Source: Mizuhopecten yessoensis (Eukaryota). From it: DNA of 64,000 nt. The notes beneath the pieces are model-generated. The model was given only the letters and a program-made list of their open reading frames with translations. It had not been told where the DNA came from and ran no database searches. Below are positions 21,108 through 41,529 of the stretch, piece by piece. A program made the position numbers and the translations under genes. The stretch spans positions 556,895-620,894 of the forward strand of contig NW_018408028.1 in assembly GCF_002113885.1 (NCBI RefSeq), in the 5' to 3' direction. Within the stretch, counting starts at the first letter, position 1, and each line of letters opens with the position of its first letter.

Positions 21108-21868
21108 TTATCCTTCCTGGGACCAACCAGTATCCTTGGTCAGGTCTTGCGACATATCATGTGACTGAGAAAGTTCTGATATGTCATGTGACTGAGAAAG
21201 TTCTGATATGTCATGTGACCTAGGAACGTCCTGTGATAGAGATGAGTCATGTGACCCCTGACGTAGATCCTCTCGCTGAAGCCTGAGGTGTACTCTCTCC
21301 ATGGCCTTGGAATGTGAAGCCACATCATGTGACACAGACACGTTTCCTTCGGTATGTGAATCCACATCCATGGCAGTAGTATGTGAAACACTGACACTTG
21401 AATCACCTCCAGAAGTTTGTGAAGCACCGGGACTGTCCATTAGATGAGACACATTTCCTGAAGTCTCAAAACCTAACAGAGAGCTACTTTTGTCCAGCTG
21501 CCATAGTAGCATTGACCTACTTTTATCTAGGTCACAAGACAACAGTGACCTAGTCTTTTCAATGTCACTTGAATGTTGTACAGATTCTTGTGATGTTTCA
21601 TCATCTTCTTCATTTGTTTCTAATTTCTTTTGACTAATCCGTTTTTCTCTCTGTCGTTCATTTTTCCACCATATTTTGACCTTGGCAGCAGTGACCTTGG
21701 GCCTTTCTAAGCGCACATGACCTTTATTGAGTTCGTCTGCGAAGTTTTTAAGTTTTGCGTTTGTGGGATTCTTACATTGTTTGTACCACTTCCTCATCTG
21801 AGGCACCTCGTGTTCTGGGTGGAAGGTCATTCGAGTGTCCCTAGGACTGGACTTGTCTTCTGAGAAAC
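21108..21868 (-). CDS. SATB-like arm terminal exon B3: one Dve-type homeodomain plus Ser/His-rich tail
   Basis: ttgttccag acceptor in phase 1, in frame with ORF 21108..21830; HD TRMTFHPEHEVPQMRKWY...KVKIWWKNERQREKR. Confidence 0.88.
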
Positions 21869-22192
21869 CTGGAACAAAGGGTAATCTTAGTATAACAACA
21901 GCTCTATAACAGTATTGTTTTATTTACTTTGTTACACGTTTCTACAATATTGACTGCTTTTTCAATGTTATTTCATGTTCCAGTACATGAACAAATGATG
22001 ATGATATTCAGGACAAAGGCCATATCAGGGCACACAGTTTACAACATGGTTCTTTATAATAAATATGTTTTACTGTTGAACATTGGCAGATTTTTATTCA
22101 AGCAAAATATCTGGGCAGGAAATATATCTTCCTTTTCACATTAAAATATTTCTTAATTGGATTAATGCAAAATAATGAAAATTATATTAAAA

Positions 22193-22420
22193 CGTGGTCA
22201 GATGACGTTGTGCACTTGTCTTCCACCAAGGCGCCCAGGTTTTGAGGCTCTGTTTGGCCATGAGAAGGTATTGGTTCACCTTCCCTACCATGTGGGTTTT
22301 CTCTGGGTATTCCACTTTTCTCCCACATTAAGACTCGTTGTCCACTACCATCCTGGCCAACAGGAGTGGCTAATATACGGGTTTGTTGACCGAACCTGTT
22401 TTATTATTGTTGTTACAAAT
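22193..22420 (+). mobile_element. Degenerate tRNA-derived SINE with V-domain-like core, in the intron between exons B2 and B3
   Basis: gtgggttttctctgggtattccacttttctcccaca resembles the V-SINE core GGGTTTTCTCCGGGTACTCCGGTTTCCTCCCACA. Confidence 0.6.
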
Positions 22421-22429
22421 ATAGTTTAC

Positions 22430-22535
22430 CTCTGACATGTTGGATCTTAATTTTGTACCAATCCCCAAACTCACGGCACTTCTCTGCACTCAGCTTGCTC
22501 TCATACTTCCAGTTGGCTATGTAGGAGATTGTTGA
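22430..22535 (-). CDS. SATB-like arm exon B2: CUTL second half (STISYIANWKYESKLSAEKCREFGDWYKIKIQHVR), phase 0->1
   Basis: ttctcttag acceptor, GAG|gtaaac donor; matches SATB SMISSIVN...SAAKCQEFGRWYK (recalled). Confidence 0.88.
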
Positions 22536-22950
22536 CTAAGAGAAAAGAAGATGTACACTTAAAATATCTAGTGAGTGAGGAATGTTAATGTGAAGAAACA
22601 TGTAGTGGTTCTGTGAGAAAAAAGGTTTCAAATTTATCACCGTACATTTTGGAATTTTTTTTCTTCTAATTTCAGCTGTTAAATTTCATCTTTTAATTTT
22701 TTGTAACTTTGTTTAGACCTAGTAGCTTCAACTCAATTGGCATCACAGAGGTCTGAAACTTTGATGTTCTGACCATGATCTGAAAATTCACAAGGTACAA
22801 AAATTCATGAGTTTTGAAGCATTTGTGAAAAAAGTGAAATAGAAACCTTTGTGAATATTAGCAACTTTTCAAAAGTCCTATCAAAAGTCCGATCTACACA
22901 GGTTTCTTACATGTAAAAAGACACAGTAAAACACTCAATTAAAATTGTAC

Positions 22951-23068
22951 CTGAGTCAGTGGACATTCCTTGGCTAGAGCAGACTGACTGGATTCCCTAA
23001 GTAGGGAAAGGACGGCACACCTTACAGAATGGTCAGTCCAGGTATCGGGCACGGTGAACCCAGAGGAA
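22951..23068 (-). CDS. SATB-like arm exon B1: CUTL first half (SSGFTVPDTWTDHSVRCAVLSLLRESSQSALAKECPLTQ), phase 2->0
   Basis: tttacag acceptor, CAG|gtacaa donor; QSALAKECPLTQ closely matches SATB1/2 CUTL QSSLAKECPLSQ (recalled). Confidence 0.88.
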
Positions 23069-23148
23069 CTGTAAATACAGGAACAAGTAAAGTTGTGCTG
23101 GAATAAGAAGAATGCTTATATAGATGAAACTTAATTACAGTAGACAGA

Positions 23149-38412: not shown

Positions 38413-38716
38413 CTGCAACGACAAAGAAAGTATAACAAAATCATAGTAAGGGATGGTTTAAATACCCGATGTACTGTAAAGCTAGGAGAAACAAAACATA
38501 TACTTTCAAGGTACCTCATACATTTAGCATCTAAAAGTGCAGATTTTTTTTGATTTTTTTTTAGTGTTAAACATACCACAATTTTTAATATTAACAAATG
38601 ATGAACACTGCAAAGTATACAAGTTATGACCCCTGTGTGTTTCCATTCGGGCCAACAAGGTTTTATAAATACAAGTTGAAAAAAGTTGTTTCATATTTGT
38701 TATAAAAGAAAAATAA

Positions 38717-38987
38717 AGTTTACATACAGCGAAACCCATAAATATGACAGAAGTTATTAATATGACAGAAATTTACATACAGCGAAACCCATAAATATGA
38801 CAGAAGTTTACATACAGCGAAACCGATAAATATGACAAAAGTTTACATACAGCAAAACCCAAAAATATGACAGAAGTTTACATACATCGAAACCCATAAA
38901 TATGACAGAAGTTTACATACATCGAAACCCATAAATATGACAGAAGTTTACATACAGCGAAACCCATAAATATGTCAGAAGTTTACA
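38717..38987. repeat. 35-bp minisatellite (aagtttacatacagcgaaacccataaatatgacag), about 7 copies, in the A1-A2 intron
   Basis: Direct tandem units starting about 20 nt into the intron. Confidence 0.9.
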
Positions 38988-39007
38988 ACAGAAAGGAAGT
39001 AACTCAC

Positions 39008-39113
39008 CTTTTCTATGGGACAGCCGGATGTGAGGAGGAGCCCGTGTGATTGGGTAAGGAGAAGTTGTAGTAATTTACTCTTCACTTCGTCGGTAGAGCT
39101 CAACTTTGATTGG
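39008..39113 (-). CDS. dve: Dve arm exon A1 (QSKLSSTDEVKSKLLQLLLTQSHGLLLTSGCPIEK), phase 2->0
   Basis: tttccag acceptor, AAG|gtgagt donor; resembles the Dve KLLxLLxxQSHxxLxxxGCP segment. Confidence 0.88.
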
Positions 39114-39773
39114 CTGGAAAGTGCAAACCAAAATTGGCGCATGTCGTTTAAAAATCGGAACTACAAGCTACTTGGTATCTGTATTTAGTATTATAGAAAA
39201 TACCCACACAACAACTGGAAAACACACTTTATTTTAAAATGGTTGACATTCAATTTCAATCCAAACGGTTTTTATTTTGATGAGAGTTGAAAGGAAGCGA
39301 AAGTAACTTTCTTCATAATAATAATGTATTAAGATATGCTGGTTGAAAGGATACAAAACAATATTATCTTTTTATATACAATATTGTGTCAGTGAAGGTT
39401 GTCTCCCCTGGGGATGTCATGGTTATATAATGGTTGATCAAGGATGTTTCATAAACATAACTTTCCATTTATTTTATGGATGAGGAATTCCACAAAATAA
39501 AAACAATGTGTTAGATTCAACAGAAATGTATTACTGTTTGCTATTTAAGTTTATAAAAACAGGATAAAAGTGTTGATCAATCCGTATGATTAATTCAGAC
39601 AAAAGAATAAATAAACAAAGGTTTTTATCAAGATTTTGTTCCGACAAGTTTGAGTTTATTTCTGAAGGGTTTGAGTTTGTCATAAATGGTTTCTTTTTTC
39701 TTATAGTTCAGTGTCTGAAATAATCAGGACTTTGTACAATTGACTGTTTGACCTTGGAACTATTGATTGATAC

Positions 39774-39900
39774 CTGCTGAGGCGTATCCGCAGTGTCGCC
39801 ACCTGTGTCAGTTCTCCCCAAATATCTTCCAGTGTTGCTTTTTCGTCATCAGTGATAACTTCGAAGGTCAAAGGTCGCCAGTTCTTGATTTGTACTGCAC
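39774..39900 (-). CDS. dve: ULD/COMPASS exon 2 (GAVQIKNWRPLTFEVITDDEKATLEDIWGELTQVATLRIRLS), 127 nt, phase 1->2
   Basis: aacag acceptor, CAG|gtatca donor; not in the ORF track, translated by hand; matches the C-terminal half of the ULD. Confidence 0.9.
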
Positions 39901-41328
39901 CTGTTTGTGGGTAAACAACATCGATGGAAATTACGTTTTACCAATCATCAATCCCGTTAAGACGCATGAAAAATATTTGAGCTTGATCAAAACCTTGATT
40001 ACAAAATTTCTTGTCAGAGCTTTAATATCTTAATGTTTTATACCAGAACTAAACAGCTGATCAAAGAAGCCATTTAGCCAAATTGGTGATGAATATTTAA
40101 ACACAAGAGTTTCTTCTCTGATGCACAAATGTCAAAAATAACGAAAACGATCAAAGCATTGATTTACTAATGTTTTTCCTCAATATTTAATATTCCAGTT
40201 TCTCCTACTCAATTTAAAAGTGATCCAGTTTGCGATTTACCAATATTTCTCATCCATGTGTAAGGCCGTCTAGCTTTCTCCCATTGAGTGTCTAAACCTG
40301 AACACTTATGTTTGGTATACGTGCCAGTAACATTTCTGATTGAATTCCACTTGTGTATAAAATCTAGTCATTTTCAGCCCGACTTTATATATATGGATGC
40401 GTTCACTTTCCATTTCATTCAAAGTTAACGACGATATTGGAAACATTGTGTTCTATTTCAAATATCCATTTCTAGAAAGCGTTCAGATTGCAGAGCTGAG
40501 GAAAGACCAATTTATCTATGATCTGTTGTTTCTACATATTCTGAAATGCTACTGAAAGTTTCATTTAACATTTTATATAATTCATTTATTTTCTCAGTAT
40601 CATTATCATTGATAAGTCCTGACAGTCCATCAACACTTCTCCTTTTAAATTTCATTTATTGAAAAAACACACAAAAAAACCCATTGTTTTTAAAAAGAAA
40701 GTAATTCAATGATCAAATTTTTTTTATTGAACTTTCTGAATATTCTACTTTGTTTCGACTGTGTTACAGGTTTTAAGAGTATAGATTGGAGCGTAAAATA
40801 ATCGTCTGTAGAAATATGTGTTACTTAGCACAGGTGTTGAAACAAACACATTCAAATAAATTAACTTTTCTGGCTACTTATTTTTATGACCATCCTTCAA
40901 GAATGTTTAAATAACAATAGTGTGTCTGAAGAAATATAACAAGATCTTATATTTTACATTCTAGAAAATTATTGATCAAATATCTAGTACCTATACTATA
41001 CAGGTACTTATAATACACACTTCACCGAGATTATGTTTTTACAAAAAAAACAACACCTGGAAATAACAGACAAAATATGTACTCTTTGAACTTAGTCCTT
41101 ATAGAAGAACAAAGATTAGTATTTATTTATGGTGTTGCACAAAATTAAAACCCTTAAAATTTGTTCTTGAAACAAAAACTGTAAAATTTAACCTCGCAAA
41201 ACTAAGACATTTAACAGTATCTGATAAAGTAATTGACTTTGTTTGAGTGGTTTGACGTCCACTTCACTACAATAAAGTAATTTACTGTATTTAAGGGATT
41301 AACTATTGGCGAGGGTTTCCGTGGTTAC

Positions 41329-41529
41329 CTTTAGCACTGATGGCCTCTGAGGGGTTGTATCCCAGTTTGATAAGTGCGGTCCTCACAACTTCGCCGAAAA
41401 GGGTGGTACTGGGAAGTATCGCGTAGGAATCCAGCTCCACGGAACTGTTGGAGCCACACTCCGGGGTGTCAAAGGTCACGACCCCTGTTGTTTGCTCAAT
41501 GATGCAATGCACAGGTAACGACTTTGTAC
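41329..41529 (-). CDS. dve: COMPASS/dve-SATB family gene: ULD/COMPASS exon 1 (GTKSLPVHCIIEQ...LIKLGYNPSEAISAK), phase 1->1
   Basis: ttccag acceptor, AAG|gtaacc donor; LPVxCxxE and ALxxLGY motifs typical of the SATB/Dve N-terminal ubiquitin-like domain. Confidence 0.9.

What the first reader, a model, noticed from the sequence alone, without database searches (positions are those of the whole stretch)
21108..41529. One locus, two transcription factors: a shared ULD/COMPASS head spliced to either a Dve arm or a 'proto-SATB' arm
Seen: ULD exon 2 (39900-39774, -) ends in phase 2 (..RLS-AG|gt). Two downstream exons start in phase 2 and end in phase 0 at the equivalent position: A1 (..SGCPIEK|) and B1 (..KECPLTQ|). 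The next exons align without gaps over 27 aa (SLLSSITKGDTLSSLPHDVRCAFDKWY vs STISYIANWKYESKLSAEKCREFGDWY), and each arm ends in Dve-type homeodomain(s) with its own stop. Arm B has intact splice sites and ORF, but reading by eye I found no ULD exons or in-phase start exon for it between 23069 and 36900. Established: Dve/COMPASS proteins are ULD plus two homeodomains; SATB1/2 (ULD-CUTL-CUT-CUT-HD) are regarded as vertebrate genes derived from COMPASS; the ULD is an oligomerisation domain. Inference: an internal duplication created alternative 3' exon sets, so one gene makes ULD-CUTL*-HD-HD and ULD-CUTL-HD proteins that could hetero-oligomerise through identical ULDs. The choice would be made by competition between polyadenylation after A2 and splicing across a 16.7-kb intron. 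I cannot check whether this has been described.
Basis: partly seen in the sequence, partly recalled or inferred. Interest (0 to 1): 0.92.

Follow-up and report, generated by a model that had tools for sequence, protein, structure and literature searches.

The report
Scallop Cmp/Cmpl two-output homeobox gene
One scallop gene joins the same oligomerisation head either to a two-homeodomain Dve/Compass tail or to a SATB-like CUTL plus one-homeodomain tail; this layout was described in 2013 in sea urchins and said to be exclusive to them and their relatives, so finding it in a mollusc makes it much older.

Summary
On the minus strand lie two ULD exons, then arm A (A1, A2; two homeodomains, own stop), then arm B 13.8 kb further on (B1, B2 = CUTL; B3 = one homeodomain, own stop).

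The inferred junction 39774->23068 exists in RNA of this species. A spliced contig B3-B2-B1 runs on into 30 letters that match the end of ULD exon 2 exactly and uniquely. Two public Mizuhopecten yessoensis proteins share the head and then diverge into arm A or arm B. The genome has only one ULD. Arm B is under purifying selection, dN/dS 0.15.

The kind is already described: the Cmp/Cmpl locus of sea urchins and a hemichordate, with the same order and exon counts (PMC3784565). That paper calls it exclusive to Ambulacraria. The scallop and an oyster show the same layout. Arm-B homeodomains of molluscs, a leech and chelicerates form one clade with the echinoderm and hemichordate single homeodomains (support 99/97). 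The layout therefore probably predates the split of protostomes and deuterostomes.

"Proto-SATB" holds only for ULD+CUTL, not for the homeodomain. Apart from one note on this same window, the scan holds no earlier finding of this.

The parts
41327..41529 (-). ULD (Compass domain) exon 1. It is the third coding exon of the gene. The two upstream coding exons lie outside the window at G000:C4701:641896-642033 and 628534-629124.
   Evidence: Pfam ULD 1.7e-15, profile positions 1-69. 100% match to P0026 residues 198-265. Upstream exons located.
39774..39900 (-). ULD exon 2, the last shared exon. Its donor at 39774 (..AGC AG|gt) is used for both arms.
   Evidence: Pfam ULD 2.2e-12, profile positions 71-109. 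The RNA contig's 30 loose letters match 39777-39806 exactly.
39008..39113 (-). A1, first exon of the Cmp/Dve arm (first half of a divergent CUTL-like region).
   Evidence: Sequence and frame. Present in RefSeq model P0192 and in A-type proteins of other bivalves. No Pfam hit.
36901..38412 (-). A2, terminal exon of the Cmp/Dve arm: second half of the CUTL-like region, two atypical homeodomains, and stop TGA at 36903-36901.
   Evidence: Acceptor ..ttgcag|TCT at 38412. Stop. Two homeodomain stretches. 100% identical to P0192.
23069..36900 (-). Interval between the A2 stop and B1. It holds the 3' UTR and polyadenylation region of the A form and is intronic in the B form. It contains tandem repeats and a dispersed repeat. 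No ULD, homeodomain or in-frame start exon was found.
   Evidence: tBLASTn with ULDs and homeodomain-bearing pieces found nothing here. Tandem repeats. No joint into 23068 from 23069-23900 in four runs.
22951..23068 (-). B1, first exon of the Cmpl arm (CUTL first half).
   Evidence: Pfam CUTL profile positions 6-38. Spliced to B2, and upstream to ULD exon 2, in the RNA contig of run X1.
22430..22535 (-). B2, CUTL second half.
   Evidence: Pfam CUTL profile positions 39-66, 29.9 bits, above cut-off. Joints 22535-22951 and 21866-22428 (cut +2) with GT..AG ends on the minus strand, in two contig runs and two raw RNA runs.
21108..21868 (-). B3, terminal coding exon of the Cmpl arm: one atypical homeodomain, an acidic/serine-rich tail, and the stop at 21110-21108. 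RNA depth ends at about 21060-21000, near an AATAAA.
   Evidence: Pfam Homeodomain 1.4e-5. Exon-only RNA depth. dN/dS 0.15 against another pectinid.

Best explanation
This is the scallop (Mizuhopecten yessoensis) orthologue of the Cmp/Cmpl locus. It is one transcription unit of about 64 kb with four shared coding exons: two N-terminal exons outside the window and two ULD exons inside it. After the donor at 39774 the transcript takes one of two routes.

- Splicing to A1-A2 and polyadenylation after A2 gives a Compass/Dve protein: ULD, a divergent CUTL-like region and two homeodomains (887 aa in the RefSeq model).
- Skipping A1, A2 and their poly(A) site and splicing 16.7 kb on to B1-B2-B3 gives a Compass-like (CMPl) protein: ULD, a SATB-type CUTL and one homeodomain (634 aa).

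Shown: the exon anatomy, the 39774->23068 junction in RNA, B1-B2-B3 splicing, a single ULD in the genome, purifying selection on arm B, the same layout in an oyster, and membership of the arm-B homeodomain in the clade that holds the echinoderm and hemichordate single homeodomains.

Inferred: the choice is a competition between use of the A1 acceptor and A2 poly(A) site and the distal B1 acceptor (alternative last exons). The two proteins bind different DNA targets, as shown for sea-urchin CMP and CMPl. They could co-oligomerise through their identical ULD where both are expressed.
For: - RNA: the run X1 contig (1,248 nt, depth 13.7) is 21194-21866 + 22428-22535 + 22951-23071 and runs on for 346 more letters. 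Its 30-letter loose end equals window 39777-39806, once, on the right strand. Depth is 0 in the bins that lie wholly within the introns in both contig runs. Raw RNA-seq reads show both B joints. Arm B is held by 18 runs of 12 studies, 14 of them with contig sets of transcriptome size; none is recorded as RNA.
- Models: P0026 (ULD+B) and P0192 (ULD+A) are identical up to ..LRIRLSS, apart from a gap in the low-complexity N-terminal repeats, and then diverge.
- One ULD in 988 Mb, and none between the arms.
- Selection: B3 dN/dS is 0.15 overall and 0.07 in the homeodomain.
- Oyster: Saccostrea has ex1, ex2, ULD1, ULD2, A1, A2, then 14.2 kb, then B1-B3 on one strand. A 401-aa ULD-CUTL-HD mRNA occurs in six RNA runs of a related oyster.
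- Family: the B-type homeodomains form one clade, support 99/97. The exon counts 4 shared + 2 + 3 and the order Cmp-then-Cmpl match the published sea-urchin locus.
- Synteny: a divergent EMP70 gene lies upstream in scallop, oyster, unionid and spider.
- ULD homodimer model: score 0.58, best of 3 controls 0.00. The mark was reached by 21 of 30 proteins solved as pairs of one chain and by 0 of 23 solved as single chains. The runs agree in at least 95% of contacts and the partner pLDDT is at least 81. It may be memory of SATB1.
Against: - The exon 2->A1 junction in this species rests on a RefSeq model, not on reads I laid.
- X1 and X10 are only guessed to be RNA runs by the tool. Their spliced, exon-only contigs argue that they are.
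- In the two raw RNA runs, junction reads into 23068 did not reach the listing threshold, so B-form usage there is low or under-sampled.
- The echinoderm representatives in the tree are Amphiura and Ptychodera database proteins, not the published P. lividus CMPl.
- The scallop arm-B homeodomain lacks the one extra residue that the paper uses to tell CMPl from CMP.
- Several mollusc annotations call arm B a separate ULD-less gene.
Confidence: 0.88

Rival explanations
1. Arm B is a separate paralogous gene with its own promoter. It makes a ULD-less CUTL-HD protein, and the ULD-B1 transcript is occasional read-through splicing.
For: RefSeq and GenBank annotate ULD-less arm-B genes in Saccostrea, Mytilus, Pinctada, Mercenaria and Mactra. 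The Saccostrea model starts about 760 bp upstream of B1.
Against: - B1 has no in-frame ATG, and its open frame is closed by a stop 47 bases upstream of the acceptor.
- No joint from 23069-23900 into B1 appears in four runs.
- The one assembled scallop transcript across B1 carries ULD exon 2 at the same depth as B1-B3.
- Full-length ULD-B mRNAs occur in six oyster RNA runs.
- An own promoter further upstream cannot be excluded as an additional source.
Confidence: 0.07
2. The two-arm layouts of molluscs and of ambulacrarians arose independently, by convergent internal duplications of a Compass gene.
For: - The scallop arm-B homeodomain lacks the extra residue of ambulacrarian CMPl.
- Spider and leech B-type genes stand alone, each with its own ULD.
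- The ambulacrarian branches in the tree are long.
Against: - B-type homeodomains of all phyla form one clade, apart from both A homeodomains: 99/97, and 100% of bootstrap trees.
- Arm order and exon counts are the same.
- The boundaries ULD|B1 and CPLxQ|B2 are the same in scallop, oyster and spider.
- The extra residue is shared by chelicerates and ambulacrarians.
- The B CUTL is conserved across phyla.
Confidence: 0.08
3. Arm B is a decaying duplicate, expressed as noise and without function.
For: Depth in raw RNA-seq is low, 1-4 reads per position.
Against: - Open frame, intact GT..AG sites and dN/dS 0.15.
- 60-80% homeodomain identity across bivalves, and orthologues in at least five phyla.
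- Held in 18 runs of 12 studies.
Confidence: 0.02

Closest known systems
Cmp/Cmpl locus of Ambulacraria (Cavalieri, Melfi & Spinelli 2013, PLoS Genet, PMC3784565)
   Same: - Shared 5' exons encode the N-terminus and the Compass/ULD domain.
- A two-exon arm with two atypical homeodomains (CMP) comes first, then a three-exon arm with one atypical homeodomain (CMPl). The two arms are mutually exclusive.
- The split point lies right after the ULD: 233 of 396 aa are shared in P. lividus, and the scallop has 156 aa from the split to the end of the homeodomain.
- The arm-B homeodomain falls in the clade of echinoderm and hemichordate single homeodomains.
   Different: - It is found in a mollusc, where the paper states CMPl is absent.
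- The scallop B homeodomain has the same insertion length as the CMP homeodomains, not one residue more.
- It has a long C-terminal tail (634 aa against 396 aa).
- Insulator binding was not tested.
- The paper does not note that the Cmpl arm carries its own SATB-type CUTL.
COMPASS/Dve family (Drosophila dve, C. elegans dve-1, amphioxus Bf-Compass)
   Same: The arm-A product has a ULD plus two homeodomains with the long helix II-III insertion. It is conserved at 50-94% identity over the queried stretch across molluscs.
   Different: The classical description is one gene, one architecture. Here the same head also serves a second tail.
Vertebrate SATB1/SATB2
   Same: ULD followed directly by CUTL. 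The scallop ULD+B1+B2 scores 120.7 bits against the SATB1 ULD-CUTL structure 4q2j. By my count on the printed alignment, the CUTL is about 54% identical.
   Different: There are no CUT domains. The homeodomain has W48 (WWKN) and a long insertion, instead of F48 and a one-residue insertion. No SATB homeodomain appears among PDB hits.
CUX1/CASP shared-head alternative splicing
   Same: One CUT-superclass locus gives two proteins that share an N-terminal part and differ in their 3' exon sets.
   Different: CASP lacks DNA-binding domains. Here both products are homeodomain transcription factors. A 2023 review calls CUX/CASP the only such case among homeobox genes (PMC10515288) and overlooks Cmp/Cmpl.

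Membership tests
Cmp/Cmpl locus | Both mRNAs use the same 5' exons, including the Compass/ULD domain | tested here: met
   The ULD exon 2->B1 junction is present in an RNA contig. P0192 and P0026 have the same head apart from a gap in the low-complexity repeats. The genome has one ULD. The A junction is supported only by a RefSeq model.
Cmp/Cmpl locus | A two-exon Cmp arm (two homeodomains) followed by a three-exon Cmpl arm (one homeodomain), mutually exclusive | tested here: met
   A1, A2, then B1, B2, B3, each arm with its own stop. The X1 contig that carries B1-B3 joins ULD exon 2 directly and holds no A exon.
Cmp/Cmpl locus | The Cmpl homeodomain belongs to the CMPl clade, distinct from CMP homeodomains | tested here: met
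   IQ-TREE, 74 homeodomains. The B group, including Amphiura and Ptychodera, is one side of a branch at 99/97. The P. lividus sequence itself was not available.
Cmp/Cmpl locus | The CMPl homeodomain insertion is one residue longer than in CMP (11 against 10) | tested here: not met
   The scallop and the other mollusc B homeodomains measured have the same spacing as A HD1 and HD2. Ambulacrarian and chelicerate B homeodomains have +1.
Cmp/Cmpl locus | CMPl binds the sns5 boxB insulator element and blocks an enhancer | not testable with these tools
   This is a functional assay from the paper.
COMPASS/Dve | N-terminal Compass (ULD) domain plus two atypical homeodomains with a long insertion | tested here: met
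   Pfam ULD and two homeodomain stretches in A2. Insertion spacing is uniform in 46 A-type homeodomains.
SATB | ULD followed by CUTL | tested here: met
   Arm-B product against 4q2j: 5.7e-34. CUTL alone against 2l1p: 3.1e-16.
SATB | Two CUT domains | tested here: not met
   No CUT (PF02376) hit in any exon. B2 is followed directly by the homeodomain exon.
SATB | Homeodomain with F48 and a single-residue insertion | tested here: not met
   The B homeodomain reads ..KIWWKNERQ with a long insertion. No SATB homeodomain is among the PDB matches.

The most novel reading that the evidence does not exclude
The dual-output Cmp/Cmpl locus was already present in the last common ancestor of protostomes and deuterostomes. 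Insects, nematodes and chordates lost it, and spiders and leeches split it into separate genes. The ULD-CUTL head of vertebrate SATB1/2 descends from the Cmpl isoform (shared ULD exons + B1 + B2), on to which CUT-CUT-HD was shuffled. This would replace the current view that SATB came from a Dve-type Compass gene, and would remove Cmp/Cmpl as a synapomorphy of Ambulacraria.
Probability: 0.45. Interest if true: 0.7.

Novelty: new member of a known kind. Interest (0 to 1): 0.55.

Why it matters
It corrects a published claim. [quoted passage not shown]

It dates a rare gene architecture to early bilaterians: two homeodomain transcription factors with different DNA-binding tails but one oligomerisation head, made from one promoter.

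It gives a concrete candidate for the source of the ULD-CUTL module of vertebrate SATB proteins.

It also flags systematic mis-annotation. Arm B is called a separate ULD-less gene, 'SATB2' or 'mucin-12-like' in mollusc genomes.

Tried and rejected
- **Second ULD for arm B.** The Pfam ULD search of the whole genome found only the window's two exons, plus an 18-20 bit fragment on contig C5220. That fragment is below cut-off, has no second half and lies in an unrelated place, so I rejected it. tBLASTn of three ULDs on the window found none between the arms.
- **N-terminal exons.** They are not in the window. They lie upstream on the same contig.
- **Gene context of 'isoform X2' B-type proteins** (scorpion, Limulus, brittle star) and of Nucella. 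These are not on record, because only the longest product of a gene is kept. The Potamilus gene range is too long to return DNA.
- **Same-species A-type mRNA for the oyster of P0008.** None is in my set.
- **Literature on Cmpl outside Ambulacraria.** Nothing in five full-text searches, nor in the spiralian, arachnid and oyster homeobox surveys I opened. The library lacks most subscription journals.
- **Third homeodomain or extra exon between A2 and B1**, as in the Ptychodera model. None found.
- **Joined sequence.** I built and submitted none of my own. Exons were searched by reference, and where a joined protein was needed I used the public proteins P0026 and P0192 returned by the searches.

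
Full report
**What is in the sequence**

The genome is 987.6 Mb in 82,659 contigs, and the window is C4701:556895-620894. Public proteins that are 100% identical to the window's exons are labelled Mizuhopecten yessoensis.

On the minus strand I read the exons directly:

| Exon | Coordinates | Notes |
|---|---|---|
| ULD exon 1 | 41529-41327 | |
| ULD exon 2 | 39900-39774 | ends two bases into a codon, ..AGC AG\|gt |
| A1 | 39113-39008 | one base, then 35 codons |
| A2 | 38412-36904 | stop at 36903-36901 |
| B1 | 23068-22951 | one base, then 39 codons |
| B2 | 22535-22430 | |
| B3 | 21868-21111 | stop at 21110-21108 |

Both A1 and B1 complete the split codon to serine, and both end in phase 0.

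Pfam calls the two ULD halves at 57.6 and 47.6 bits. It calls the two CUTL halves in B1 (profile positions 6-38) and B2 (39-66). It finds nothing in A1, two homeodomains in A2 and one in B3.

**Is arm B a gene of its own?**

- The ULD profile finds only these two exons in the whole assembly, plus one fragment below cut-off on another contig.
- tBLASTn with scallop, oyster and spider ULDs at E<=10 finds nothing between 23069 and 36900.
- B1 has no in-frame ATG, and its frame is closed just upstream of the acceptor.

**RNA evidence**

The B3 exon is held at 93-96% of its sampled words by 18 runs from 12 studies. Fourteen of these have contig sets of transcriptome size.

I laid two such runs and two raw RNA-seq runs on window:20900-23900.

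- In the two contig runs depth is confined to B3, B2 and B1 and is zero in the bins that lie wholly within the introns, apart from a dispersed repeat upstream. The raw runs show a few intronic reads.
- The joints 21866/22428 and 22535/22951 have GT..AG ends on the minus strand. They occur in both contig runs and in raw reads.
- Run X1 holds a 1,248-nt contig (depth 13.7) made of B3+B2+B1 that runs on for 346 more letters. The first 30 of those letters equal window 39777-39806, the only match in the window, on the right strand. The three letters CAG are common to the end of ULD exon 2 and to the end of the intron before B1, which is why the aligner stopped at 23071.

No joint enters B1 from 23069-23900.

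**Public models**

- P0026, 'DNA-binding protein SATB2 [Mizuhopecten yessoensis]', 634 aa, is N-terminus + ULD + B1-B3.
- P0192, 'mucin-12-like', 887 aa, is the same N-terminus + ULD + A1-A2.
- They are identical to ..LRIRLSS, apart from a length difference in a low-complexity repeat, and then diverge.
- The two N-terminal coding exons lie upstream of the window on the same contig. The gene thus has four shared coding exons, then 2 or 3.

I did not build or submit any joined sequence myself. Exons were searched by reference, and these database proteins served where a joined protein was needed.

**Selection and conservation**

- Against a genomic contig of another pectinid, B3 has dN/dS 0.15 (homeodomain 0.07, tail 0.23; dS is near saturation).
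- Saccostrea cucullata has the same order on one strand: ex1, ex2, ULD1, ULD2, A1, A2, then 14.2 kb, then B1, B2, B3. No other gene is called in between.
- A related oyster has a 401-aa ULD-CUTL-HD mRNA, assembled independently in six RNA runs.
- Arm-A and arm-B models sit on the same contig in Pinctada, Mercenaria, Mactra, Nucella, Patella caerulea (locus tags 021801/021802) and the nemertean Tubulanus. This rests on contig lengths and tags only. I did not inspect these at the DNA level.
- A divergently oriented EMP70 gene lies upstream in scallop, oyster, a unionid and a spider.

**What it is**

Cavalieri et al. 2013 (PMC3784565) described exactly this architecture in sea urchins and Saccoglossus. 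Common exons encode 233 N-terminal residues with the Compass domain. Exons e5-e6 give CMP (two homeodomains). The mutually exclusive e7-e9 give CMPl (396 aa, one homeodomain). The two mRNAs have different developmental profiles, and only CMPl binds the sns5 insulator.

The scallop has the same arm order, the same exon counts and the same split point just after the ULD.

Across 283 collected proteins, a SATB-type CUTL goes with one homeodomain (39 proteins), and the divergent CUTL-like region goes with two (95 proteins).

In a maximum-likelihood tree of 74 homeodomains, the single homeodomains form one side of a branch with support 99/97. This group holds molluscs, the leech Helobdella, spiders, a scorpion, Limulus, a tick, a sea spider, the brittle star Amphiura and the fourth homeodomain of the hemichordate Ptychodera. 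It is separate from A HD1 (94/90) and A HD2. A FastTree of 456 domains agrees. B-type proteins also occur in Lingula and Tubulanus.

The paper's diagnostic extra residue in the helix II-III insertion is present in ambulacrarian and chelicerate B homeodomains but not in the mollusc ones measured. The scallop therefore fails that single criterion.

**Separate genes elsewhere**

In the spider Parasteatoda and the leech Helobdella, the B-type gene has its own ULD exons and no A arm between ULD exon 2 and B1. The spider's A-type gene is on another chromosome-scale contig. This looks like duplication followed by complementary loss of arms.

The boundaries ULD|B1 and CPLxQ|B2 are conserved between scallop, oyster and spider.

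**'Proto-SATB'**

| Query | SATB1 ULD-CUTL (4q2j) | SATB1 CUTL alone (2l1p) |
|---|---|---|
| Scallop ULD+B1+B2 | 120.7 bits | 62.9 bits |
| Scallop ULD+A | 68.2 bits | 12.7 bits (E 0.74) |

They agree with the scan's other note on this window (s1-546573) about SATB-likeness. I did not test its claim about intron positions.

The B homeodomain has no SATB-like features and no SATB hit, and there is no CUT domain. The arm-B product is therefore a CMPl protein. Only its ULD-CUTL head resembles SATB.

**Mechanism**

Shown: one donor and two acceptors, each arm with its own stop and 3' end.

Inferred:
- The A form needs the proximal A1 acceptor and cleavage after A2. The B form needs both to be bypassed, plus a 16.7-kb splice. 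This is an alternative-last-exon choice.
- The ULD is 52 bits to the SATB1 ULD.
- A two-copy model passes its controls with score 0.58 against 0.00 for the best of 3 controls. The mark was reached by 21 of 30 proteins solved as pairs of one chain and by 0 of 23 solved as single chains. The runs agree in at least 95% of contacts, and the partner pLDDT is at least 81. It may be memory of the solved SATB1 domain.
- Hetero-oligomers are therefore plausible wherever both forms are co-expressed, but this was not tested.

**Novelty**

What appears new is the occurrence of the locus in protostomes. I found no paper on it in five searches and several homeobox surveys. A 2023 review of CUT genes omits Cmpl altogether. 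This contradicts 'exclusive to the Ambulacrarians' and points to the Cmpl isoform as the likelier source of SATB's head.

**Limits**

- The A junction was not checked with reads.
- The runs with the decisive contig are RNA by inference.
- The published sea-urchin CMPl sequence was not in the tree.

Noticed in passing
window 23122-23222 and 23324-23626: Short stretches upstream of B1 with very high RNA-contig depth (up to about 2,000) and many different loose ends on both sides. This is a dispersed repeat present in many transcripts, not an exon of this gene.
   Followed up: partly
window 24015-24715, 25334-25691, 26189-26928: Tandem arrays inside the A2-B1 interval: a 44-nt unit x 15.9 copies at 91% match, and 36-nt (107-nt higher order) units x 10-20 copies. 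A 17/35-nt array at 20390-20830 lies just downstream of B3.
   Followed up: no
P0067 (Ptychodera flava, 1135 aa) and P0125 (Anneissia japonica, 816 aa): RefSeq models of a hemichordate and a crinoid string arm A (CUTL-like, HD1, HD2, a weak third homeodomain) and then arm B (CUTL, HD) into one protein. This is either a third, serial isoform or a mis-joined model.
   Followed up: partly
L019 (Parasteatoda tepidariorum) and L021 (Helobdella robusta): B-type genes are compact (8-13 kb), have their own ULD exons and lack an A arm. The spider homeodomain is split by an extra intron.
   Followed up: partly
G000:C4701:674218-680058 (+), outside the window: An EMP70/TM9SF gene lies head-to-head about 30 kb upstream of the scallop gene's first coding exon. 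The same neighbour occurs in Saccostrea, Potamilus and the spider B-type gene, so the microsynteny is conserved across phyla.
   Followed up: partly
window 12000-16000: Strong GC skew (+0.53) over 4 kb. It coincides with the minisatellite that another note of the scan (s1-546592) describes.
   Followed up: no
P0064 (Nymphon striatum, 739 aa): A sea-spider model with two CUTL-HD units in tandem and no ULD. Two further B-type models (P0092, P0096) exist in the same species, which suggests local duplication of arm B.
   Followed up: no
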